Below are positions 116 to 63,441 of a DNA stretch of 64,000 bases, piece by piece. The notes beneath the pieces were generated by a model, which searched no databases, was not told the origin of the DNA, and saw only the letters and a list, made by a program, of their open reading frames with translations. The DNA comes from Diadema antillarum (Eukaryota). How positions within the stretch are numbered: position 1 is the first letter of the stretch; each line of letters begins with the position of its first letter. The stretch spans positions 186,001 to 250,000 of the forward strand of contig NW_027272584.1 in assembly GCF_040938485.1 (NCBI RefSeq). The letters are read 5' to 3'. The position numbers and the translations under genes were made by a program.

Positions 116-251
116 ATGGCTCTTCGGGCCAAGAATGACTTTTCTCAGGTGAAGGCGTACTTCTCAACTAAAGAATGGGCGGACATGAACGACTATGAGA
201 AGATGAGGTTGAAGAACATCAAAGAAAACTATGAGATGATGCGAGAAGTTG
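116..251 (+). CDS. PRDM9: PRDM9 coding exon 1, ancestral KRAB domain
   Basis: Acceptor ttgcag ends at 76, ATG at 116, donor G|gtaag at 252. [46 protein letters not shown] matches the human PRDM9 KRAB pattern (F..I..YF...EW..M...EK.R..N.K.NY). Confidence 0.93.
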
Positions 252-3200
252 GTAAGAAGCAAAGAGTGATAAGTTATGGAAGTGAAATACTAGGTGTTTC
301 AAAAAACATTTCCCACTTTTGATCATTAATAGCTCAAAAACTATTCATCCGATAAAACTGTCATTGATATAAACAATAGCTGAATAGTGTACAATTTGGT
401 TGAAGGTAATTTGAATGTGACAGCATAAATCAGTTTCATTAAATCTAAGATTGATTTTGAAGTAAGGTTTCAGATTTTGGTCAAATTTTAACCCTCTGTA
501 CAAAAATTGAACCTTGCCCAGGAACCAATGATGTGTATGTGAGTGTGTGCTGACAATGGCCCTGAACAATGGACATGCCTGAACCACCCGTTAACTAGGC
601 GTCAGTCTCTTGCTCCCAGGCACATGAATACTTAATCAATAATTCATGTGGATTGCCCTGGGCACTGCTAGTCTGGATTCATGCACGGTAAAGGGTAAAC
701 TGCATGCACATGGAAAAAGGAAGCACACGTTTCCATGTGCTTGCAAACACCACATTCCATTCCAGCTGGCAATCATTTTCAATTTTTGCTTCATATATCA
801 CTAAATTTGGGATATAGATAAGCATAAGTGATCTAAAGTTCCTCATTTTAATGCAACTGTCTACTAATTAAATAGTCTGACAAATTTTTCGCTTTTTGAT
901 AAAAAGAAATAATTTTTGGTAAAGAGTTCAGCAGCATTTATCATTGGGGCGATATGTTTCACAGTAGATTTATTTAAGGCTCCATTTACACAAGTGTATA
1001 CTCTAATTGATTTTCTTTGCTTCCTGTCACCGTGTTTACGATAGAACAGAAGGTATTCATTGTAATTTCGTTTTTCAGAAGTAGGGAGAGCACTGTCGAG
1101 ACCCAACGACAGTATCGGCAGGCGTTTGACTTTACACAGATACTGCCAGAGGCTGAATAAAGACTAGTTGTGATAGTGGAATTTCTCATGAATAAATAAT
1201 GAAGCATTCAAACCCTAACCATTGTTTAGGACCATTGTCAGGGTGTTAACCACACACTCCATACACACCCATTGACCCCTGTGCAAAGTGAAATTTTGTA
1301 CAGAGGGTTGAAAATAGAGCAAAATCTGGAACCTAACTGTGAAATTAATCATGGATTTCATGAAACTGATTTATGTTTTCATATTTAAACCACCTCCAAC
1401 CAAATTGTACACTATTCAGCTATTACTCATATCATTGACAGTGTTATCTGATATATAGTTTATGAATTATTAAGAATCAAAAGTGGGAAATGTTTTTTGA
1501 AACACCTAGTATATCTAGGGCCTAGGTAGGGCCTATAGTTCAGACAAAAGCATGACATGAACATTGGAGTCTAGATTTAGATTTTTTTTTTTTATTTCTG
1601 TAATTATAATTGTTGTTAGATCTCGAGCCATGTGTTATCATCAAAATAAAATTCATGTAAGAATACACTCATGTCACGGTATTATGTATTCATTTAAATC
1701 ATGTGACAGAATTTCGTACGGATTTGTATGTTTATTCCATGCCAGCTCTTGAATATGGACGCAAGAATAGAAGTTATAGAAGAGTAGGTCCTAGGCTATA
1801 TGTGTGCTCCCTTGTGGGTGTTGGGTTTGGGACAAGACTGTTATGGGTCAAAACTATCACAATTATATTAGTCCATCATATTCTGTTTGCATTGAAACAG
1901 TTGCAGTAGATTTATATTGTTGGCATACCGTTTTATGGATAGGTTTAGAGAAATGAAATAAAATCATCCCTCCCTTCTTTTTTTTTCATGTGTATCAAAG
2001 TTACTAGTATTATGTACGAGGGCTGCATGCAAATCAAGAGAATCTTAAGCTGTAACGTTAGCCCTGCTGTATTTTTCATTGTACGCTTATATTACTGATA
2101 CGTTTCTGCTGTACATTGCGTAAAGGCAATGAAAAAATATTCTGGTAACAAGTGTGATTATGTATTCGCATGTAGGCTACTCTGGCTCGCACAATGTATG
2201 TATGGGTGTATGTATGTTCATGTACAATGATAATACAGGAATCAATAAATCAAATCAAAATCAAATACCGTTTGTGAGCGTACATTGGTCGTTCATCAAT
2301 GAAATATCAGGACCGAAGGATCACCGCTACATTATCATACAGTGTATAGGGATTTGTTATATAGGGATAGGTATAGTGTAAAGGGATTTGTTAAGGGTTT
2401 TTGTTTCGGATTAGTTTTGTTAGTTATACAATGTAGGTCTTTTTGTCTCAGTTTCTTTGTTTCATCCATTTTCAAAGTATATCAGTCAATCGATCATACA
2501 ATTTCTTGTATTATGTGTGGGGGAATGCACCCTACAAGCCCAGCTTTTTAGCATTCCTCCCCATTTTCAGCATTTTCGTATGCTTACAATTTTCTAAACT
2601 TATCATTTATTCTTTATTATGAAATCTATGTACCAGTACTTGTATTCAATGTCAGTAATATATTTATATATTTCTGTTGGAAATAAAAAAATGGATGAGT
2701 GAATGAATGAATACAGGGAATTTGTGTTCAGGGTCTTGTTTCGCATCCATGTTTAAAATCCCGTTTCGTTTTAAACAGGACTGAATGTTCCAGCTCCAGA
2801 CTTCATGCAGAGTAGTCGAAAGAGGAAGAAATCAAGAAAAAGAGAGAGTGACAGTGAAGACGAGGAATGGACGCCTGGAGGCTGGAAGAAGAAATACACC
2901 AAACCAAGAGGTTAACGTCTCGGCTGTTCTTGTTTACAGGCTGTAATGTTTCTTCTCTTAACATGCCAGAGCATAAAGTACGTGTAGCATTGTTCCTTGT
3001 TCTGGCCAGCCATTATTTCTACTTCTCTGACTGCACGTGATAACTACTGTAATGAAATAAGGTTGCAGTTCATTATTCCGAAGGTTCGTTATTCCAAAGG
3101 TTCTTTAGTCCGAAGTTCGTTATTCCGAAGAGTCATTATTCCGAAGAGTCGTTAATCCGAAAATGTGATAAGGTTTGTTATTCCGAAGGTTCATTAATCC

Positions 3201-6200
3201 GAAAATGAAATAAGGTTCGTTATTCCGAAGGTTCGTTACGGACCTTGTTTTATTGTCGGATCAACGAACTTTCGGAATAACGAACTTTCTTAATAACGCC
3301 ACAAATATTTGGATTAACGAACCTTTTTTTTTTCATTTCGGATTTAACGAACCTCTAGTTAGACCCATAAGGAATTTGTGTGTTTCAGATTTAACGAATC
3401 TTCGGAATAACGAACAGCACCCAAAAAGTGGGTAAGATTTAAGATCTTCGGTACTGAGGGATATCGGCCTTCTACATTGCAGAATAAAGGGGATGAGTGA
3501 AAGGTCACGAGAAGCAAAAGCACGCAGAAAGATGGTGTACTCGTATTATCATGATACACTGTATATCACCTGCTTGACGTAAGACAGCAAGAAAATAAAG
3601 GTCGATATTCAACATTGTTCAACAAGGCCGAAATGTCAATAAAACGTGAAGTGTAGACATGATTTTTTGACTACTCTGCCAGAGTCTTTTTTTCTTCTTT
3701 GAAGAGCGTATGACATGACAAGGCAAAGGAAAAGGGTAAAAAGTTCAATGAATTTGCTCGGGAGTGAATAAGTTTGTTACACAACCGTTTAAATCACCTC
3801 TGTCATTGGTACATTTCCTGTGGGCATTCGTCAATGAAACATCATATCAAGGTAAATAAACGGGGAGAGCGTTTCAATTGAGTACGAGGCTGTTCTGTTT
3901 GTTAATGATTATGATTAACATTGCCTAAATATGATTTTATACAGATATTTTTTTTTCACAGAAATCTTATATTTATTTAAAAGCGCAAAGGTCACACACT
4001 GCTAAAATCAGTAGAGGCTATGGAATTATCAAGTCTCTGTTCAATCATGCCAATTAAGAATTGGTTTCTGTTAATTATATTTGGTGTTGTTCAAGAAAGT
4101 CTCTGTCAAGAATTTCCAAAGACTACTAACAGTTCAGTTGAATGTAAGGACAGGAAGTCATGCAGAACTTGTCGACATGATTTTTTTTTTTTGTCATATA
4201 CAGCGCTTACGGTCCCTTCTAGCTTCAATGTGATTGAAAAACTATATAAGTAAATTTACTGGCGAATAAACATAATATCTTTACATCGAAATAAATGTGC
4301 CATATATTGTCACTTAATATTACTCTGGGAACTGTTCCAGCAATCGTTTCTCTCATTCTAATGTAAATGTTATCGTTATTGTTTATTGACCGAGGTGTAA
4401 GTAAACCCCAAAATACATGTTATGGCTAGCGTGTTCATTTTTTCGTCTTTCTCAAATGACTTTGTGTTTAATCCACAGCATCGTTTAAGACACCCTTTAA
4501 AGCATCGCCTAGGAAGGAAAAGAAGAAAAGCTCTTGTGGAAATGCTTCAAAAGTGAGTAAAAATTAATGAAATTGTTTTACCAAACCACGAAACGGTCAC
4601 TGTACTTCGATGAGACATTTTATTCTCAACATTCTCAAGCTGAAGATGAGCTAATGAATTAGTTATAAAATCTGTATTTTGAAAAAAAATGGAAAATAAT
4701 CTGATGATAGCAATGATGTACAATATGACAGGGGGGATGTAACGGGTCAAGGAGAAAAGTGAAAAAAAAATAGATTTGATACTAATGGATTTGAATTCTA
4801 CTAGGTTTACCGGTAAGTCCTACAGTAATAGCGGTTGGTTTCATGAAAAGAAGGAACGAGACATTTTTCTTTGTGCAGAGACAACAGAAAGATCACCTTG
4901 GATAAGTAATCTAGTGCATCACGGTGTTAATGACTGAATATTAAGGTGATAGCAAGGGGTTAAAGCAAGATCTATGAAAATGTTACAAAGACTCGGGGGA
5001 AATTCAAGTTCAATGTAACTTCCTTTCGTTGGAAATTTAGAAGGCAGACTCCGCTAGATCACCCACTGGGAACCTTGGAGATCCTCTGGGCGATGGGGAC
5101 AAAACTAGGGATGGACAGATATCAGATCTTTTGGACTGGAAGGATTGCGGGGACAGGCAGGTGGAATCCAACGTTGACTCTCGGTCAAGCGCGCCTGCAG
5201 GTGACGGGACTGGTGGTCCAGCGAAATCAACCACAGAAGATACAACTGCCAGTCCTGCTCCATTCAAACCACCTGGACCAATGCAAGTGGGGCGGAAAGC
5301 AGGGCGACCATTAGGTAAAATTGATAATTACGTTGTCAAAAAACAAACAAACAAACAAAGAAAATCCCTATGAACTTTATCAGTAGCAGGCATTTATTAA
5401 ATTATGTAAATATAGAGTGCCTTAGTGTATTCAAATTAGTATAATGAAGCCATGAAATGACGCGCTGCGTTATGGGTTTTGATTCCTGTCAAATGGTCAT
5501 CTATGATCCTTCAACAAGGTCTTCAGGGCTGCCACGGTAAGAAGAAAAAAGTGCTTATAGTCGTAACTCCTTTCCTAAATATTCATTAGTTGCAAATTTG
5601 GTAATACAATACCAAAGTATACATTTTGATAATGGAATTAATGTAGACATTTACACTCCATTTCTCCGAATCATGGACATTGTTATCAGTGTACTTATAT
5701 TTTCGGTGATATTGCTGAAAATAATTTTGATGTATTCATGAAATTATGCTTAAGAAAGTAAATCACACAAGCCAACTTGGTTTGTATATTTCACAACTCC
5801 GTATCAACAATCATTAGAGCGAAATGTATATAAAAGAGAAGAACATAACAATAACATATTGAAGATCAGCATGACTTTAAGATAAGAAACATTTTTAAAC
5901 TTTTGTGAAGACAGCGCGAGCCCGTGTCTGAAAAAGCCTGAAACAACAACAAAAACAGGAATACATGAAATACATAAAATTGTTAATGATGTGTGGCTCA
6001 TCAAAGACTAAAGCAAGTATACATTGGAGCCAAGTGGATACAAAATCAAAACTGCAATGAATACAGACCGCTCAAGACTCTATTTCCTGAAATGTGTCCA
6101 GGACCTGCCTTGCGAAATGATCGCTAAGAGGACCACCATACCATTTCAGAGAACCGCACGTGCAAACCATAGATTCACGAGCAGTAAACAAACGGCTCTC

Positions 6201-9200
6201 CATTTTTAATTCTTAGAGAAACGACGCGAAACTTCGACGGCACCAGCTCCAACATCTCGTTATCCCAGAAGAGCAGTATCCAAGAAATGCTACAAGGAAG
6301 ACGACGTACCAGATGAGGATCACTACATATGTGAGTAGGCTATTCTAGTTTAGACGAAGATACTGTCACTTTTTGTTACGTTTTGTTAATAACTTGTTGC
6401 AAATATAGCAAGAATCTCTAGAATACAAGAAAGAAGGAACACATGAACAGTGAATGATTAGTAGCATACACATTGATTTTGGAATCGGGGCTTTTGGGAT
6501 TTCTCTTGAATCATTCTGCATTGTAGATAAACGAAAGCAGTTTCACTCTTTATAGATGTTAAAAAGATTCTTGTAAACGGTAGCCAGACTCGTTCTCTGG
6601 TATTTTTGATTCACATCAAGTAAAGTCTGAGGCTGCAGTGCAATATTGACATCGCTTTGTATTTGCTCTTGATGGGTTGATAACTTCGACAATATCAACT
6701 TGTCCAGAAATAATATAATTATGGCAGCAATCTATGAAAATCCCCATATAGTGATCCTTCAAAGGGCTAAAAACAACATTATTTTCCATAAAATACTTAT
6801 CAGTAGAAATTGAAGAAACTATATCCTTGCGAAATGCTGTGGGTTTTTCTTTGACAAAAAAAATATCGGCAAAACCTGCGGATCAAACAAGAGTCACATT
6901 TGATCAAGAAATATAACAGCCATCATGGCATAACCTACAATTTAAAGTTGATTATGCCATCAGTCATGGAATAGCAACATGTTATAATATATAAGTTCAT
7001 TATATTCTGTCAATTCCCGATGACGAGAACAATATTAATCACATGTGATTTAAAAAGATGAGCATTTAAGATGATCTAGGTTTACAGAGATCTCACTGAG
7101 AGTTACCAATACAAAATGCTAGTAGTTGCTTTCCTCCCCTATTGTCAGTTTGTGAAGAATGTAATGAGATATACGAAGGTGAGTGCATGAAACATCCACT
7201 GGTAATCATCCGAGACACAACCGTACCAAAGGGTTGCAAAAACAGAGCGAGGAACACTCTCCCAGGAGGCCTGGTGATCGGACAGTCTTCTATTCCTGGA
7301 GCTGGACTAGGGGTCAAAGCTACTGAGCACATACCCAAGGGCCATCGGTTCGGACCTTATGAAGGTGATATAGTGGACGCAGAGACCGGCTTCGACAGCG
7401 GATATGCGTGGGAAGTAAGTCAAGTTCATTTTTTTTTTCTTTTCAGGTTAAGTACCTCTTTTTAGCCATGTTAAATAAACATGTTGTTAAGTTAGATAAC
7501 AAAATTATGGCCCCTGTTTGAAAGTGACCGTCAATGAGAGAATGACCTCTCGTGCTTTATTTCTCCTCAGAAAATCCAGCAAAAACTAGCACAGCAGAAA
7601 TGAAACGAGGTGTAAATTATGTTCTCAAGGCACACTCGCTTTTGTGAAGATTTAAGAATAAAACAAATTCCAGGAATTTTTTTCTAGCTTTACAAACAGC
7701 TCTATTGGAATAATGCAATGGATGATTTCATAGAGCAAGACTACACCTTTATGACTGAGAAAAGAGTAAATCGAAATGCGTTTCCCTTACTTTACGAGTC
7801 TCGGGGTTTTAATGAACGTCAGTTACTGTATCTTATTATATAACGTTAGGATAGACACTCCTTAAAAAAGAATACATGTGTGTGTGAGTGTGTGTGGATG
7901 TGTGTGTGTTGCGCCTGGCTGAGTGTGCATGTTCAATTCGTTTTCAGAAATTACTCCTGCATCACTGGTAAAAGGCTTCGATGACATGCGAGCAACAAGT
8001 GTTTTGTAGATATTGCATGTATTATATAGATTTCAGCCATTTTTAGGCCCTCTCAAAATCACAAGTCAAACTAAAAACAAAGCCGAAAAACTTAAAGCTC
8101 ATTTAGAAATTGCATAGGTTTTATTCTTATTGCCTAATACCAAAATGTCAAATATCATTTGTAACATGCAAGATTTGTAAAATTCTCCTTGTTGTTAACA
8201 TAATTTCCTTTTTCAAATGTAGGTGTGTCTAGATGGCAAGCCGCATCACTACGTTGACAGTAGAAGCGAGGAAACGGGCAACTGGATGAGGTATATCAAC
8301 TGTGCCCGAAACGAGGCAGAGCAGAACCTCGTGTCTTTCCAGTACCTTGGACAGATCTACTACCGCACCTTCAAACCAATCTGCCCTGGCACTGAACTGT
8401 TGGTCTTCTATGGCGACCAGTATGCAAAGGAACTTGGAATACAGCTGCACCGCAACAAACTTAAAACCTGCACAGGTAATCTTAATTATAGAAGCTATGC
8501 TAATAAGCCAGTTTGGGGTTTCAGTTTGAGCAGGTTGGTTTTTAATTTCACTGAGATAGGCATTTGTAATGCTATGATTATTAATGGATCCTTATAACTA
8601 GTGCCTGCCAGTACATCCACCTGACAGCAAGCCTGGTATTTGGCAGTGTTAACAGAAAAAGTTTGTTAATGTGTTCAAAACAGCACAATGAAATAGATGC
8701 TTCCCAAAGTGTTGATTGACGAACCATTCTGGTCACTTCATCTACACGGGTTCATTCTTTGATAGAATACGAGTTCCATAAAATGCTATGTCGGGCAAGC
8801 AGCTGCATTATGTCGCTTTGAATTGAGTGAAGTGCCTAACCAACTGAGAAAAATGAAAGGTCATATTTGTACCCATGTGCACGTGAGCTATCTCCGAACT
8901 GGCTTACACATGTTATAAGAAGTTAGGTTCGTACCATGCAGCGATATATGAACCTTTATGTGGACATAATAATTCCTTTACTTGATTTGAGTTTTCGGGA
9001 AACTACCACTTATAATTCTTATCAACGAAACGGTATGAAAACATCAAAATGAAAGAAAGAAGGGAAACACGAACAAAATCGCACGCAAAACGTAAACCAG
9101 GCGAAATATCCTTGATCTCGTTTCACATGATATAATATGTATCTTTGATTACTTCTAAATTTACTTGCTGAATGTTGTTCGTTTTCGATCTTGCTTTGTT

Positions 9201-11657
9201 TTGCGTGAAATAAACTAATTTTTCTTACGGCAATTAGCGAATCAACTACAGTGTATAAACATAAATGTCCATCGGATTTCAACACTGGTGTCTTGGCTTT
9301 GTTTGAGTAATGACTTACACGTACTGGGTATTGAGTCATCTATTGCGAACAAATTACCGGGTTCTTTGTTATTTATGCCTCCTCCGGAGGAAAAAAAAAT
9401 AACTGAGTGTGGAGGTATTACTTTTAAATTTGAAATTTCCACTGATGATATTATGGCTAAGTGATAAACAGAACATAGATACATTTATAATCATTTGCAT
9501 GAATACAATGTTGGTGTTGTGTCAAAGCCCAAAATCATATGTAATTTTCATGTGGTTTGAAAGTAAGTCTTGAACAAAAATCTTTAGCTCCGAATATAAA
9601 TTGATAGTAACCATTACGAAGGATAGCAGCTTATCGATAATTAATGTGGATTTTGCCCAAATGTGAAATAAGATGAATTCAGTAAATGCAGAACTGCTAG
9701 TAGTTATAACATCAGTGAAGTTTGAGGAAAATTGGACAAGCCCTTCGAAGGCTAAGAACTTTTACATTTATTCTCATGTAGTGTCGTCGCTTTATAGATC
9801 AGAAAACTTCAGTAATTTGTGATTTCACAGTAGGGTAACAATACATTTCACATCATTTTCATTTCCTCTCATAATGAAGAAACGCTAAAAATGTTACCCT
9901 GGTTAATATGTTACCCTTAAAATTTATCTTTTTAGTTGGAGAAATGTGCGCTTTTCATTGATGCAAAAAATCTTGTTATTTTATAGACTTCTTTCCCGCA
10001 TTTTCTTCATAGCATTATCCTTACTTGTACAGTGACATCACAATTTGTAGCCGTCCTGTTATCTAGCAACAACAACATTAGCAATAAAAATTTATAATTC
10101 GTATGTTGATAAGATATTTTCTAGGTAATAGGGCCTACGAGATATTTTACCTCGTATGGTAGTATAGTACTATACCTCGTATAGTACTATATTTATAGTA
10201 CACTGTACTATTTTGTTACACAGGAGTGACAAGTTCATATCTCCCTAAGGTTTCAAAATGTTTTACTTTTTGTAGACCCTGGACTCTACACATGTGAGGT
10301 ATGCGGGAGAGTGTTCTCACGACCCAGGTATCTAGCCGGACATCTCAAGTACAGCCATGGTCACGTTGGGTTATTACCAGACCAAGATGCTCCCGATGCA
10401 GCCTTCTTGGCCTTTATCAATCGTCAACAGCAGCAGTGGCCTGTGCAAGGAAGCAATGGCAGACGTTCAGACGTATCATCTAAGCAGAGCCATGTCAGAT
10501 ACCCAGCGTGCAAGAAGTGTGGTCAAATGTTCCAGTCTTTAACACTATTCACACAGCACTTGACAAATCACCCTGAGGAATTGTGTAGTCTGAAGTCCAA
10601 AGTGTATGAGCAAGATGCGTCGAAGGGACGCGAAGATATGGGGCTGTTTGCACAATCTGCCAGATTATCGGAGGAAAGCCAGCGAACCACAGGAAATGAG
10701 TCCGCTTGTGATGATATCAGCACATTTCTTAAAACAGACCAAAATATCTCTAGTCCATCAAATATAAAACTTCATCAGGCAAATGGAATCAGTAAGCAAA
10801 TTTCTTCTTGTTCAAAGAAAAGCATAACCTCAAATACGAAATTTCGGAAGCACGATGAGCAGTCAAAAATGTGTGGAATCATTCAGGGTTGTGAAAAACC
10901 ATTTGCGTGTGATGTTTGTAAAAAGGCATTCAATACATCATCTAATCTCAGGATACACCAGCGTATTCACAGTGGTGAGAAACCATTTGTGTGTGATGTG
11001 TGTAAAAAGACATTCAGTCAATTAGGTAATCTCATTAGACACCAGCGTATTCACAGTGGTGAGAAACCATTTGTGTGTGATGTGTGTCAAAAGGCATTCA
11101 GTCAATTACCTCATCTCAGGACACACCAGCGTATGCACAGTGGTGAGAAACCATTTGTGTGTGATGTGTGTAAAAAGGCATTCGATACATCATCTGTACT
11201 CAGGACACACCAGCGTATTCACAGTGGTGAGAAACCATTTGTGTGTGATGTGTGTCAAAAGGCATTCAGTCAATTAGCTACTCTCAGGAAACACCAGCGT
11301 ATTCACAGTGGTGAGAAACCATTTGTGTGTGATGTGTGTCAAAAGGCATTCAGTCAATCAGCTACTCTCAGGAAACACCAGCGTATTCACAGTGGTGAGA
11401 AACCATTTGTGTGTGATGTGTGTCAAAAGGCATTCAGTGATTTAGGTAATTTCAGGTCACATCAGCGTATTCACAGTGGTGAGAAACCATTTGTGTGTGA
11501 TGTGTGTCAAAAGGCATTCAGACGATCAGCTCATCTCAGGACACATAGAAGTAAGTGCAATATTCCAGAGAAGGCTTCTTGCAGCAGGTCTGCAGAAAAC
11601 AAAATGAATTCACAGGTCAAAAACACTGTGTTACCTATTGCAGAAAAAGAGGACTAG
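116..11657 (+). CDS. PRDM9: PRDM9/Meisetz histone H3K4/K36 methyltransferase, full-length; join(116..251,2779..2910,4479..4552,5041..5314,6217..6330,7149..7414,8223..8475,10276..11657) = 2631 nt, 876 aa
   Basis: All introns are GT-AG and the phases chain (1,1,0,1,1,0,1) into one open frame. There is an in-frame TAA at 98-100 upstream of the ATG. Domain order is KRAB-like ([31 protein letters not shown]), SSXRD-like, CxxC zinc knuckle, PR/SET ([30 protein letters not shown]), post-SET C2H2, then a tandem C2H2 array. This architecture is diagnostic of PRDM9. Confidence 0.95.
290..1509. mobile_element. Non-autonomous Tc1/mariner-like element with long TIRs in PRDM9 intron 1
   Basis: TA|CTAGGTGTTTCAAAAAACATTTCCCACTTTTGA ... 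TCAAAAGTGGGAAATGTTTTTTGAAACACCTAG|TA. About 33 bp of perfect terminal IR, with diverged IR continuing for about 290 bp. TA flanks, no transposase ORF. Confidence 0.82.
2380..2712 (+). mobile_element. L2-clade (Crack/Daphne-like) LINE 3' end
   Basis: Stem-loop GGGGAATGC-ACCCTACAAGCCCAGCTTTTTA-GCATTCCTCCCC at about 2519-2562, followed by AATAAA and a (GAAT)n tail. The 5' boundary is approximate. Confidence 0.55.
2779..2910 (+). CDS. PRDM9: PRDM9 coding exon 2 (KRAB tail, basic NLS-like and acidic segment)
   Basis: ttaaacag| acceptor. Phase-1 frame [33 protein letters not shown] parallels human G-LRATRPAFM and the DSDEEWTP motif. The donor gttaac is non-optimal. Confidence 0.88.
3060..3422. mobile_element. 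Foldback-type MITE built from about 15-bp sub-repeats (GTTCGTTATTCCGAAG)
   Basis: The left half has tandem GTTCGTTATTCCGAAG variants and the right half has the reverse complement (CTTCGGAATAACGAAC). Terminal IR GGTTGCAGTTCATTATTCCGAAG / CTTCGGAATAACGAACAGCACCC. Confidence 0.75.
4479..4552 (+). CDS. PRDM9: PRDM9 coding exon 3 (linker)
   Basis: atccacag| acceptor and |gtgagt donor. Encodes [24 protein letters not shown], phase 1 to 0. Confidence 0.75.
5041..5314 (+). CDS. PRDM9: PRDM9 coding exon 4 (low-complexity linker)
   Basis: aaatttag| acceptor and G|gtaaaa donor. Open GC-richer frame, phase 0 to 1, compatible with both neighbouring exons. Confidence 0.72.
6217..6330 (+). CDS. PRDM9: PRDM9 coding exon 5 (SSXRD-like)
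   Basis: tcttag| and |gtgagt sites. [37 protein letters not shown] parallels human ...[23 protein letters not shown]. Confidence 0.88.
7149..7414 (+). CDS. PRDM9: PRDM9 coding exon 6 (zinc knuckle and PR/SET N-half)
   Basis: attgtcag| and |gtaagt sites. [16 protein letters not shown]...[19 protein letters not shown]...FGPYEG...SGYAWE. Confidence 0.96.
8223..8475 (+). CDS. PRDM9: PRDM9 coding exon 7 (PR/SET C-half)
   Basis: aatgtag| and G|gtaatc sites. [53 protein letters not shown]. Confidence 0.97.
10276..11657 (+). CDS. PRDM9: PRDM9 terminal exon (post-SET fingers plus zinc-finger array)
   Basis: tttttgtag| acceptor. [28 protein letters not shown], a second isolated finger [21 protein letters not shown], then 8 tandem fingers. 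Stop TAG at 11655-11657. Confidence 0.95.
10893..11564 (+). repeat. Coding minisatellite, 8 x 84-bp zinc-finger units
   Basis: Units start at 10893, 10977, 11061, 11145, 11229, 11313, 11397 and 11481. Scaffold GAGAAACCATTTGTGTGTGATGTGTGT(C/A)AAAAGGCATTC...CACCAGCGTATTCACAGTGGT is nearly invariant. Confidence 0.98.
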
Positions 11658-60798: not shown

Positions 60799-62310
60799 TT
60801 ATTATGACAGCTCTTAAACCGGATTCCTTATTGCATTTTGAATGAATTACTTACAATGTAATGCAGTAACAGACCTGCAAACCTTCCTGAGTGAAAAAAA
60901 ATCAGTCGACGTTTTGGCTAGGAAATAGGAAAGAAAGAGCACTTCCCATATAAATGTGTAAACTTCCCATATAAGTGTGTAATAGAATATTCTCAAGAAA
61001 AAAAAAATAAGGTAAGTCCTGTTGAAACAAGAGCGGGAAATGGTCAAAATTCAGATTCTTTTCTCGAAATTCAAAATGGTTGGGAGGTCTGCCGGAAGAT
61101 CTGACATCTGTCATGTTTATAACGAATTCCTCAATAATTTGTTCCAGGAAAGGGCCTATATGTTGCGTTTATTCAACTAGTGCAAATAGTATTGTTCATA
61201 ATCATTTCTTTCATTTTTTTCCTTGTCAATTTTATAACTGGCAAGGGAACGACGTCATCTCATTTGAATATCTGTTGGATGTTGTTTACAGGAATCAATG
61301 CTGTAAGACGGCCATAGTCGTGTGTCGATGGCACTGTTCAAACTATCCCACATCAGTCGTCACTGACGGGCAGTAACACCAAGCGTTGGCACGTATTTTT
61401 CTTTTCTTTTGATTCAGGTGAGTGTACAAGAAAGCTAAATTACGAAAGCAATGCCTTTGTAATCCAAATATGAAGAACTTTCAACCAAAAGGCCTTAGAT
61501 TCGTTGAAAAATTATGGATTTAGCGCCTTTTGGTGGCAAGCTCTTCATATTATTGCAGATGGAGTGCAATCCGTCAAAATCCAGTAACACTTCAGTGTAA
61601 TTAGACGAATATCAGACAGTCCGTTCAAAATTCATGCAATTCTAAAGTTTCGGTGTCTTCATACGTTAAAATCAAAAGACCACTAAAATTCGTGATGTCA
61701 CTGCAGAGTGCACCATAGAACGTTACAAAGAAAATGCCACAAAATCTCATGTTTTTATCAAATCAAAAGTGCTCATTCCTTTACTTGTTATGATATCATA
61801 GGATGCATATTTGATATTATCCTCCTGCTTTCTGGAAGAGGGAAGTCAAATGCGCTTTTAACATATTATACCAGAATGAAAATTATATTCTATTCTGCTT
61901 ACATTCTACGAGCTATGTGCATTCATCTGTAACTACTTTAAACCAATTTACCCTCAATCTGTAGACCGTAAATCCACTCCATGCACAAACCACTGACTAT
62001 TCCCCGATTATCCATAACAACCAATAGAAAGGCTTTTTGGATTACCCCTTTCTCTGCAGGATTAGAGAACTGTGGACAGTGTGTAGAATGTTATGGGGGT
62101 TTCTTTAGCAGTCTCGGAACTCAAAGGGGTAATTAAATACCGAGATGTTGGTACTTTTTAATAGCTGTCGGGTCCTGATACTGATTATAATACTTTTATT
62201 AACACTTGTCAATCTATATGAAAAAGGCACTCAAACAATATTTGTTAATATTGTTTTTTTTTTTCTTGGCAGGTAACCACGGGCGTCCCGCTGACGGATT
62301 AAAAAATAAA

Positions 62311-63441
62311 ATGGTTGTAGGATGGGCACGATACAATCCGTTTAGAAGGAAGTTTTGTCGGCTAATTCTCCTGGTCGTCATTATCCTGAATTTCGGCATC
62401 GCGATCCTGTTCCCCAAGAAAGTCTTTTCTGATGGAATGGCGCGAAAGTTGGTAGCTGACCAGGACATACCCAGGAGCACGTCTGTAGTAGACGAGCGAA
62501 ATTCAACCGTTGGTGGCGCTCCATCGATTGCTCCGAACTTGACAGTGCACGCCATGACGACGGCGAAATACACCTCCAGTGGGGACGCTGTCACTGAAGG
62601 CACGAAGCATGTCAATCCGCATGACTTCAAGTACGTCTACAACGAGCCGGATAGGTGTGAGAAGGGGGAGAATGCTAGCGACGCGTTTCTCCTCGTTTTG
62701 GTCTTGTCAAGTCCTGATCACTTCAAACAGCGTACAGCTATTCGCGACACCTGGGGCGGCGTGGCCAATGTAGATGGCCACGATGTTCGCGTCCTCTTTC
62801 TACTTGGGCAAAATAGTCCCGCCAACGGCACCTTAGAGTCACTCGTGAGAGCAGAGAGTGAGCAATTCCACGACATCATCCAGGAAGATTTTATCGACTC
62901 GTACGAAAACCTGACTTTGAAGACGATCGCGGTTATGAAGTGGGCAATGACCTTCTGCCCCAAGGTCGCCTACGTCATGAAAGCGGATGATGACGTACTG
63001 TTGCATATTTATAACTTGGTGTGGTTTCTGTCCAATCAGACGGCCAGTACTCTGAATAACTACATTCTCTGCGCGAGGTTTGCGGGGGTGAAGCCCATCC
63101 GCGATCCCAAGAACAAGTGGTACATGCCCGAAAGCCAGTTCCCCGGTGATGTGTACCCAGTCTACTGCTCAGGTCCCGGCTATGTGATGTCCTCCGATCT
63201 CCCCGCAGTGATCTACGAAGCTTCTCTGGACACTCCGGTCATACGACTCGAGGATGCCTATGTAGGGGTTTGCCTCAAGGGTCGCGGCGTGTCTGTCATG
63301 AATCACGAAGGTTTCTACTTTTTTACACAACCCTACTCATTTTGTAATCGACGATCGACGATGATTTTATGGCATAATACAGGACCGGATCAGATGCGGA
63401 AATACTGGGGTTCCCTCTTCACAGAAACGTGCGAAAATTAA
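62311..63441 (+). CDS. Beta-1,3-galactosyltransferase-like protein (GT31, B3GALT1/5-like), 376 aa, single coding exon
   Basis: Acceptor ttttcttggcag| at 62272, ATG at 62311. N-terminal TM (LILLVVIILNFGIAILF), then RTAIRDTWG, VLFLLG, DIIQEDFIDSYENLTLKT, KADDDV (DxD), YPVYCSGPGYV and EDAYVG. Confidence 0.95.
   Translation: MVVGWARYNPFRRKFCRLILLVVIILNFGIAILFPKKVFSDGMARKLVADQDIPRSTSVVDERNSTVGGAPSIAPNLTVHAMTTAKYTSSGDAVTEGTKHVNPHDFKYVYNEPDRCEKGENASDAFLLVLVLSSPDHFKQRTAIRDTWGGVANVDGHDVRVLFLLGQNSPANGTLESLVRAESEQFHDIIQEDFIDSYENLTLKTIAVMKWAMTFCPKVAYVMKADDDVLLHIYNLVWFLSNQTASTLNNYILCARFAGVKPIRDPKNKWYMPESQFPGDVYPVYCSGPGYVMSSDLPAVIYEASLDTPVIRLEDAYVGVCLKGRGVSVMNHEGFYFFTQPYSFCNRRSTMILWHNTGPDQMRKYWGSLFTETCEN

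What the first reader, a model, noticed from the sequence alone, without database searches (positions are those of the whole stretch)
10893..11564. Zinc-finger minisatellite homogenised at silent sites but hypervariable at DNA-contact codons
Seen: across 8 fingers only three synonymous variant sites exist (GAA/GAG and GTT/GTG in finger 1, CAT/CAC in fingers 7-8), all towards the array edges. Fingers 5 and 6 differ by a single base. Every difference in the recognition helix changes an amino acid. Residues at -1 are T,Q,Q,T,Q,Q,D,R; at +2 S,G,P,S,A,A,G,A; at +3 N,N,H,V,T,T,N,H; at +6 I,R,T,T,K,K,S,T. The +6 codon cycles ATA/AGA/ACA/AAA through all four middle bases. Known: this is the concerted-evolution plus diversifying-selection pattern of mammalian PRDM9, explained by hotspot erosion (Red Queen). 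Inference: the same dynamic may be operating here.
Basis: partly seen in the sequence, partly recalled or inferred. Interest (0 to 1): 0.88.

Follow-up and report, generated by a model that had tools for sequence, protein, structure and literature searches.

The report
Sea urchin PRDM9 zinc-finger minisatellite

Summary
Window 10890-11561 holds eight head-to-tail 84-bp C2H2 finger units. Three codons carry only synonymous variation. Fingers 5 and 6 differ by one base. Every change in the recognition helix alters an amino acid.

The array is the last exon of an intact eight-exon, 876-aa PRDM9 orthologue: ancestral KRAB, an SSXRD-like motif, and a PR/SET domain with all three catalytic tyrosines. 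The window is Diadema antillarum contig JBFRCO010001696.1.

That public assembly keeps both haplotypes. It holds four intact copies in two lineages, here called W and P, with silent divergence (dS) of about 0.2 between them. Each lineage has two near-allelic copies.
- The arrays have 8, 10, 7 and 8 fingers.
- The syntenic D. setosum orthologue has 9 fingers.
- 34 of the 42 helices are distinct, although the 60-nt framework consensus is identical in all five arrays.

The other test, ranking against this genome's other zinc-finger arrays, could not be run.

The PRDM9-like dynamic is supported at sequence level. Hotspot erosion as its cause is untested.

The pattern was already published for other invertebrates (Oliver 2009) and for cnidarians (2026 preprint). 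I found no report of it for echinoderms. Another first-reader note in this scan flagged the gene itself.

The parts
116..251 (+). Exon 1: start codon and ancestral KRAB-related domain
   Evidence: The exact GT-AG gene model reproduces the NCBI protein P0002. BLASTP of the N-terminus against whale-shark PRDM9-like, which carries Pfam KRAB, gives 43% identity over 94 aa, E 7e-22. Pfam KRAB itself is only a weak hit, E 0.047, below the cut-off.
2779..2910 (+). Exon 2: acidic [10 protein letters not shown] linker conserved in PRDM9
4479..4552 (+). Exon 3: basic linker
5041..5314 (+). Exon 4: fast-evolving linker
   Evidence: Only 86% nucleotide identity to the P-lineage copies.
6217..6330 (+). Exon 5: SSXRD-like motif ([23 protein letters not shown])
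   Evidence: BLASTP against the deer PRDM9 SSXRD region gives 32% identity over 53 aa, E 1e-8, but the match also covers the zinc knuckle that follows. Pfam SSXRD was not detected.
7149..7414 (+). Exon 6: pre-SET zinc knuckle and first half of the PR/SET domain
   Evidence: Pfam PRDM2_PR E 1.6e-9. The best solved-structure matches are human and mouse PRDM9, 66 bits against 51 for PRDM11. The equivalent of Tyr276 (GPYEG) is kept.
8223..8475 (+). Exon 7: second half of the PR/SET domain
   Evidence: Pfam PRDM2_PR E 3.3e-29. Best solved-structure matches are PRDM9 entries 6NM4, 4IJD and 4C1Q, 86 bits against 62 for PRDM14. The equivalents of Tyr341 and Tyr357 are kept.
10276..11657 (+). Exon 8: post-SET finger (10293-10358), lone finger (10509-10571), spacer, finger array, 31-aa tail and stop codon
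   Evidence: One open frame runs from 10230 to 11654. Finger positions are and the exon start.
10890..11561 (+). The finding: eight 84-bp finger units, seven C2H2 and a terminal C2HC. Contact residues (-1, 2, 3, 6) are TSNI QGNR QPHT TSVT QATK QATK DGNS RAHT.

Best explanation
Shown here:
- The stretch is the coding minisatellite for the DNA-binding array of an intact, full-length PRDM9 orthologue of Diadema antillarum.
- The 84-bp units are kept alike. The 60-nt framework consensus is identical in all four copies in this animal and in D. setosum.
- The helix codons, above all -1, +2, +3 and +6, carry almost only amino-acid-changing differences.
- Finger number and content differ in every copy examined.

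Inferred mechanism: unequal exchange and gene conversion between repeat units homogenise the framework and shuffle, duplicate and delete fingers. One copy carries a 252-bp three-finger block duplicated almost without change. Some helix types are shared between the two paralogue lineages. Selection for new DNA-binding specificity keeps and drives diversity at the contact residues.

Inferred function, not shown: as in mammals, snakes and salmonids, the protein binds its motif in meiotic prophase, deposits H3K4me3 and H3K36me3 through the PR/SET domain, and directs double-strand breaks there. Biased gene conversion then erodes the motifs and favours new alleles (Red Queen).

My odds: about 0.9 for the shown and mechanistic part, and about 0.5 for hotspot erosion as the driver.
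For: Gene identity:
- Exact eight-exon GT-AG model giving 876 aa.
- The PR/SET domain matches PRDM9 structures best, and all three catalytic tyrosines are kept.
- The KRAB-related N-terminus matches shark PRDM9 at E 7e-22.
- Homologues named PRDM9-like occur across echinoderms, amphioxus and vertebrates.

Selection within arrays:
- pN at contacts over pS of the whole unit is 2.6 to 8.9 in the five Diadema arrays. The share of diversity at contact sites is 0.43-0.64.
- Complete vertebrate PRDM9 genes score 0.33-1.0, and slow PRDM9-beta about 0.18.
- 91 generic zinc-finger arrays average 0.25, maximum 0.43.

Turnover:
- The assembly retains both haplotypes.
- Copies L001 and L003 differ by dS 0.005 outside the array and by 0.5-1.8% in 10-kb flanks, yet have 7 and 8 fingers and share one helix type.
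- The window and L004 differ by dS 0.08 and have 8 and 10 fingers with no shared helix.
- The syntenic D. setosum gene has 9 different fingers.
- In Lytechinus, orthologous pairs from two sister species also have unrelated arrays.

Constraint elsewhere in the gene: dN/dS is 0.07 in PR/SET between the lineages, and every copy has an intact reading frame.

Control: a divergent echinoid SET-zinc-finger paralogue keeps its fingers position by position between Diadema and Lytechinus and has a contact-site share of 0.18.
Against: - No recombination, chromatin or expression data exist for this species in what I could search.
- Pfam does not detect SSXRD, and its KRAB hit is below threshold.
- The window array's contact-site share of diversity, 0.38 with all 8 fingers, is at the low end for complete PRDM9 genes.
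- The comparison set of other zinc-finger arrays is not from this genome.
- Two copies, L001 and L003, lie 3.56 Mb apart on one contig, so reading them as alleles is not certain.
- NCBI's models for both W-lineage copies leave the frame inside exon 8 and call the array as a separate gene. The full-length transcript is therefore inferred from the open frame and from the D. setosum and P-lineage models.
- The partners ZCWPW1 and ZCWPW2 were not looked for in the genome. A literature search found nothing.
Confidence: 0.6

Rival explanations
1. The gene and the molecular dynamics are the same, but the selective driver is not hotspot erosion. The array may track some other fast-changing DNA target, such as satellites, transposable elements or a meiotic driver. 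It may instead serve a germline transcriptional role, with recombination placed by default at promoter-like sites.
For: Oliver et al. 2009 found the same pattern in invertebrates before any hotspot role was known, and could only infer a fast-changing DNA interface. A PRDM9 role in invertebrates is described as largely unknown in 2026. Several coexisting full-length copies are unusual for the vertebrate hotspot system.
Against: All hallmarks that separate hotspot-directing PRDM9 from non-directing copies in vertebrates are present here: the KRAB-related domain, the SSXRD-like motif, the three catalytic tyrosines and a fast array. PR/SET is under strong purifying selection.
Confidence: 0.3
2. 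There is no rapid evolution. Gene conversion homogenises the framework, while purifying selection preserves an old, fixed set of finger specificities for a conserved target.
For: A single array cannot tell maintained differences from newly evolved ones.
Against: Five arrays from two species have 7-10 fingers and 34 distinct helices among 42 fingers. Copies that are almost identical outside the array (dS 0.005) have different arrays. A truly conserved echinoid SET-zinc-finger array looks quite different, with a contact-site share of 0.18.
Confidence: 0.03
3. The pattern is an assembly artefact or belongs to a decaying gene copy. The array might be collapsed or chimeric, or the window might hold a pseudogene.
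For: The assembly is an uncollapsed diploid draft. NCBI's model for this gene is truncated at 500 aa.
Against: - The gene contains no N and has canonical splice sites and a continuous frame.
- According to its authors the assembly is built from HiFi contigs without gaps. The mean read, 6.8 kb, far exceeds the 672-bp array.
- The window copy has the shortest branch of the Diadema copies.
- dN/dS between copies is well below 1 outside the array.
Confidence: 0.03

Closest known systems
Mammalian PRDM9 (human, mouse, cattle)
   Same: KRAB-related, SSXRD-like, PR/SET and single-exon 84-bp C2H2 minisatellite architecture. The three catalytic tyrosines are kept. Concerted evolution goes with diversity at -1, +2, +3 and +6. 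Arrays differ between haplotype-level copies and between sister species.
   Different: At least two full-length lineages coexist here. The terminal finger is C2HC, a feature shared by echinoid PRDM9 genes. The array is less homogenised than in mouse: 6 of 21 finger pairs exceed 90% identity. No functional data exist.
Cnidarian full-length PRDM9 paralogues (Rudler et al., bioRxiv 2026, 10.64898/2026.09.07.749791)
   Same: A non-vertebrate PRDM9 with all four domains, the tyrosines, and a contact-site share of diversity in the vertebrate range. Several full-length paralogues occur in one species, from lineage-specific duplications.
   Different: That work covers cnidarians only and says the multi-paralogue pattern was not seen in any other explored taxon. 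Here it appears in a deuterostome, with haplotype-level array differences and fingers shared between the lineages.
Invertebrate Prdm9 arrays in Oliver et al. 2009 (Nematostella, Lottia, Capitella)
   Same: Concerted evolution and an excess of amino-acid change at contact positions within one array.
   Different: In that paper's main text the sea urchin appears only for a germline transcript. Its figures and supplement were not seen.
Teleost PRDM9-beta and the divergent echinoid SET-zinc-finger paralogue (P0067, P0079)
   Same: A PR/SET domain followed by C2H2 fingers.
   Different: Their fingers are conserved position by position over long times, and their contact-site share is about 0.18. The window array does not behave like that.

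Membership tests
PRDM9 (complete, candidate hotspot-directing class in the sense of Baker 2017) | PR/SET domain closest to PRDM9 among PRDM proteins | tested here: met
   The best solved-structure matches are PRDM9 entries 6NM4, 4IJD and 4C1Q for both SET exons, ahead of PRDM14, PRDM11 and PRDM1. Pfam PRDM2_PR scores E 1e-43 on the spliced protein.
PRDM9 (complete, candidate hotspot-directing class in the sense of Baker 2017) | Catalytic tyrosines equivalent to human Y276, Y341 and Y357 | tested here: met
   GPYEG, IYYRT and VFYGD align to the three human positions in the 4IJD alignment. They are present in all Diadema copies.
PRDM9 (complete, candidate hotspot-directing class in the sense of Baker 2017) | N-terminal KRAB-related domain | tested here: met
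   43% identity over 94 aa to shark PRDM9-like, E 7e-22. 34% identity over 111 aa to deer PRDM9, E 4e-14. Pfam KRAB is sub-threshold. The sea-urchin ancestral KRAB is recognised in the literature.
PRDM9 (complete, candidate hotspot-directing class in the sense of Baker 2017) | SSXRD motif | tested here: inconclusive
   An RY-x-RR...Y-x-E...P-D-[ED]-D motif aligns to the deer SSXRD region at E 1e-8, but the score partly comes from the adjacent zinc knuckle. Pfam SSXRD is not hit.
PRDM9 (complete, candidate hotspot-directing class in the sense of Baker 2017) | Tandem C2H2 array in the terminal exon | tested here: met
   Eight units of 84 bp lie in exon 8.
PRDM9 (complete, candidate hotspot-directing class in the sense of Baker 2017) | Fast-evolving array: high share of diversity at contact sites, and turnover between alleles and species | tested here: met
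   The contact-site share is 0.43-0.64 in the five Diadema arrays. The arrays differ among four copies of one animal and from D. setosum. Ranking against this genome's own zinc-finger genes was not possible.
PRDM9 (complete, candidate hotspot-directing class in the sense of Baker 2017) | Determines the positions of meiotic double-strand breaks | not testable with these tools
   This needs recombination or chromatin maps from gonads.
PRDM9 (complete, candidate hotspot-directing class in the sense of Baker 2017) | Co-occurrence with ZCWPW1 and ZCWPW2 | not tested
A literature search for ZCWPW1 with Strongylocentrotus found nothing.

The most novel reading that the evidence does not exclude
Sea urchins run PRDM9-directed, self-eroding recombination hotspots with two coexisting full-length PRDM9 loci. 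Each locus is hyperpolymorphic, and the two draw on a shared pool of fingers through exchange between loci. This would be the first such system in a non-vertebrate deuterostome. It would place the hotspot function of PRDM9 at or before the base of deuterostomes. The animal releases gametes in quantities that suit sperm typing and chromatin mapping.
Probability: 0.4. Interest if true: 0.75.

Novelty: new member of a known kind. Interest (0 to 1): 0.55.

Why it matters
Whether PRDM9's hotspot role predates vertebrates is an open question. The evidence so far is sequence hallmarks in cnidarians and a few other invertebrates.

This locus adds echinoderms with stronger in-silico evidence than a single array. 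There are haplotype-level and sister-species differences in array content, set against near-identical flanks. There are also two full-length lineages in one genome.

The system is tractable. Sea urchins give litres of sperm, two Diadema genomes exist, and a haplotype-resolved D. antillarum assembly is published. Allele-specific hotspot and motif-erosion tests are therefore feasible.

There is also an annotation problem. RefSeq splits both W-lineage genes into a 500-aa 'PRDM9-like' protein and a separate zinc-finger protein, and it names the full-length copies 'uncharacterized protein'.

Tried and rejected
- A regular expression for the SSXRD motif found nothing. The motif was later found by homology.
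- Pfam does not call KRAB or SSXRD on the spliced protein.
- The third protein search, with the 262-aa array, returned only generic zinc-finger proteins and no Diadema hit. I reused those hits as a rough, non-genome background.
- I first read P0001 (L001) as a simple paralogue of the window gene, from dS 0.22 and 70-85% intron identity. The assembly papers and the cluster look-up changed this to two lineages with two copies each.
- I first argued for reduced silent divergence between paralogues from the identical 60-nt framework consensus. That argument is weak alone. There are only about 11 silent sites and the consensus is identical in D. setosum too. The cross-lineage near-identity of whole fingers is suggestive only.
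- The window holds no other C2H2 array for an internal comparison.
- The scan's earlier notes list zinc fingers only in transposons and odd fusions, with no tandem arrays to compare.
- The protein tree does not resolve W1, W2, D. setosum and P. The branching order rests on dS distances.
- L002 is the same contig as the window and holds letters where the window has N. I used only L002 positions 1-21,885, which lie before those stretches. I read and filled none of the masked letters.
Full report
**1. The observation**

Tandem Repeats Finder reports one array at 10891-11545: period 84, 7.8 copies, 88% matches, no indels. It lies in a 1.4-kb open frame on the + strand.

Cutting the array into eight 84-bp units from 10890 gives seven C2H2 fingers and a terminal C2HC finger.
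- Three codons vary only synonymously.
- Fingers 5 and 6 differ by one base.
- The listed residues at -1, +2, +3 and +6 are correct.
- The +6 codon runs through all four middle bases.

The pattern is not chance.
- The helix codons need at least 24 nucleotide changes and none is synonymous. The neutral expectation is 25% synonymous, so P is about 0.001.
- The four canonical contact positions are the four most diverse of 28 in fingers 1-7, a 1 in 20,475 chance.
- pN at contacts is 0.54 against pS 0.067 over the whole unit.

Variation is not confined to the contacts. Positions -2, +1, +4, +5 and two framework residues also vary.

The Baker-type statistic is the share of amino-acid diversity at contact sites. 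It is 0.38 with all eight fingers and 0.49-0.51 for the seven C2H2 fingers. That lies inside the range for complete vertebrate PRDM9 genes (0.33-1.0) and well above slow PRDM9-beta, about 0.18.

**2. What the gene is**

Seven exons lie upstream on the same strand. An exact GT-AG model gives 876 aa: 116-251, 2779-2910, 4479-4552, 5041-5314, 6217-6330, 7149-7414, 8223-8475 and 10276-11657.
- The two PR/SET exons match solved PRDM9 structures better than any other PRDM protein. They keep the equivalents of Y276, Y341 and Y357.
- The N-terminus is 43% identical over 94 aa to a shark PRDM9-like protein that carries Pfam KRAB, E 7e-22.
- An SSXRD-like motif sits in exon 5. Pfam does not call it.
- Homologues named PRDM9-like occur in sea urchins, starfish, crinoids, amphioxus and vertebrates.

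**3. Where the window comes from**

The window is identical to Diadema antillarum contig JBFRCO010001696.1 of assembly GCA_040938485.1.

RefSeq annotates the gene as a 500-aa 'PRDM9-like' protein that leaves the frame inside exon 8. It annotates the array as a separate 262-aa gene.

The authors of the assembly later showed that it retains both haplotypes of one animal. 84.4% of BUSCO genes are duplicated, heterozygosity is 2.52%, and there are no gaps. The N runs in the window are therefore masks. I left them alone.

**4. Other copies**

A cluster look-up and four contig look-ups gave three more D. antillarum copies and the D. setosum orthologue. All have open frames.

Silent divergence outside the array defines two lineages.
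- W lineage: the window and L004 on contig 15, dS 0.080.
- P lineage: L001 and L003, dS 0.005.
- W against P: dS 0.19-0.20.
- D. setosum is 0.11 from W and 0.19 from P.

Its downstream flank is collinear with the window for 13 kb, toward an MFS transporter gene called downstream of both genes. It is therefore the orthologue of the W locus.

Flanks and introns of the window and L004 differ by 1-4% in substitutions. Those of L001 and L003 differ by 0.5-1.8%. Both values are close to genome heterozygosity.

The simplest reading is two loci that split before the two species did, each present as the two haplotypes of the sequenced animal. There is a caveat. L001 and L003 lie 3.56 Mb apart on the same contig. 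They could be a very recent segmental duplication or a false duplication.

**5. The arrays compared**

Contact residues (-1, 2, 3, 6) are as follows.

| Copy | Fingers | Contact residues |
|---|---|---|
| Window | 8 | TSNI QGNR QPHT TSVT QATK QATK DGNS RAHT |
| L004 | 10 | TSDT QGDK QGNR HFHR QANT HFHR RSIE QAHT GGNT TSNK |
| L001 | 7 | QCNT RFIT QSDT QCNT RFIT QSDR RAHT |
| L003 | 8 | QCNT QGDK QCNT RFIR QAYK QSDK QSIR QAHT |
| D. setosum | 9 | DATT QATT TANT QAHK QATR LANT TANT RSIT QSHK |

- 34 of the 42 helices are distinct. The 60-nt framework consensus is identical in all five arrays.
- L001 carries a three-finger, 252-bp block duplicated with two base changes. This shows recent unit turnover.
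- Two fingers are nearly identical across the W and P lineages: window finger 8 against L001 finger 7, and L004 finger 2 against L003 finger 2, one base each. The neighbouring exon sequence is about 9% diverged. That suggests exchange between loci but does not prove it.
- Between the window and L001, dN/dS is 0.07 in PR/SET and 1.84 in the array.

**6. Wider context and controls**

Arrays of PRDM9-like genes in Lytechinus, Strongylocentrotus, Patiria and Antedon show the same look, and the echinoid ones end in a C2HC finger.

A tree of the non-array parts shows lineage-specific duplications in sea urchins. In Lytechinus, orthologous pairs from two sister species have unrelated arrays.

A divergent echinoid SET-zinc-finger paralogue keeps its fingers position by position between Diadema and Lytechinus. 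Its contact-site share is 0.18. Not every such array in urchins behaves like PRDM9.

Ninety-one generic zinc-finger arrays from other organisms average 0.25, with a maximum of 0.43. I could not rank PRDM9 against the zinc-finger genes of this genome itself.

**7. Mechanism**

Shown:
- homogenised repeat units;
- an excess of amino-acid change at contact codons;
- array turnover far faster than the flanks;
- purifying selection on the rest of the protein.

Inferred: unequal exchange and conversion in the minisatellite, together with selection for new binding specificity.

Inferred by analogy only: the protein marks meiotic break sites, and motif erosion drives the turnover. The main rival keeps the dynamics but names another driver.

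**8. Novelty**

- A sea-urchin PRDM9 with an ancestral KRAB domain has long been recognised.
- The array pattern in invertebrates was published in 2009 for a sea anemone, a snail and a worm.
- It was published in 2026 for 28 cnidarians. That preprint states that several full-length paralogues had not been seen in other explored taxa.
- I found no report for echinoderms.

This is a new member of a known kind. It comes with unusually direct in-silico evidence of within-animal and between-species array diversity. Another first-reader note in this scan (s1-211222) had already flagged the complete gene on this window.

Noticed in passing
window 10494-10664; L004 near 20130: RefSeq models for both W-lineage copies leave exon 8 shortly after the post-SET region and end out of frame: 500 aa for the window, through a GT-AG 169-nt internal intron, and 499 aa for L004. 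The array is called as a separate gene of 262 and 318 aa. This may be an annotation artefact. It may instead be a real short isoform without fingers, as is known in mouse.
   Followed up: partly
L001 19438-20025: The P-lineage copy on contig 26 has a higher-order repeat. Fingers 1-3 and 4-6 form a 252-bp block duplicated with only two base differences, one of them T to R at +6.
   Followed up: yes
window 11478-11561 vs L001 19942-20025; L004 finger 2 vs L003 finger 2: Whole fingers differ by one base between the W and P lineages, although the adjacent exon sequence is about 9% diverged. The window's last finger differs from that of its near-allelic partner L004 by 8 bases. This suggests finger exchange between loci.
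   Followed up: partly
L001 and L003 (contig JBFRCO010000026.1 at 4.82 Mb and 1.26 Mb): Two almost identical PRDM9 loci lie 3.56 Mb apart in the same orientation on one contig of an uncollapsed diploid assembly. They differ by 0.5-1.8% over 30 kb. They are either a recent large segmental duplication or a false haplotypic duplication.
   Followed up: partly
window 10570-10665: The W lineage, including D. setosum, has a 19-codon stretch (QDASKG...SARL) in the exon 8 spacer that is absent from both P-lineage copies.
   Followed up: no
window 25595-26827 (-), 62203-63438 (+), 33798-34853 (+): Neighbouring genes are an MFS transporter exon (Pfam MFS_1, E 3e-15; D. setosum also has an MFS_1 gene downstream of its PRDM9) and a galactosyltransferase (Pfam Galactosyl_T, E 2e-53). 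A 352-aa open frame has no Pfam match.
   Followed up: partly
P0067 (D. setosum) and P0079 (L. pictus): An echinoid-specific, long-branch SET-zinc-finger paralogue has about 17 fingers that are conserved position by position between Diadema and Lytechinus. It is a slow counterpart to PRDM9, reminiscent of teleost PRDM9-beta.
   Followed up: partly
P0003-P0010, P0118 (Lytechinus, S. purpuratus): The terminal finger of echinoid PRDM9 arrays is always C2HC (H-x-x-K-C or similar). Lytechinus has two paralogue groups that predate the split of L. pictus and L. variegatus.
   Followed up: partly
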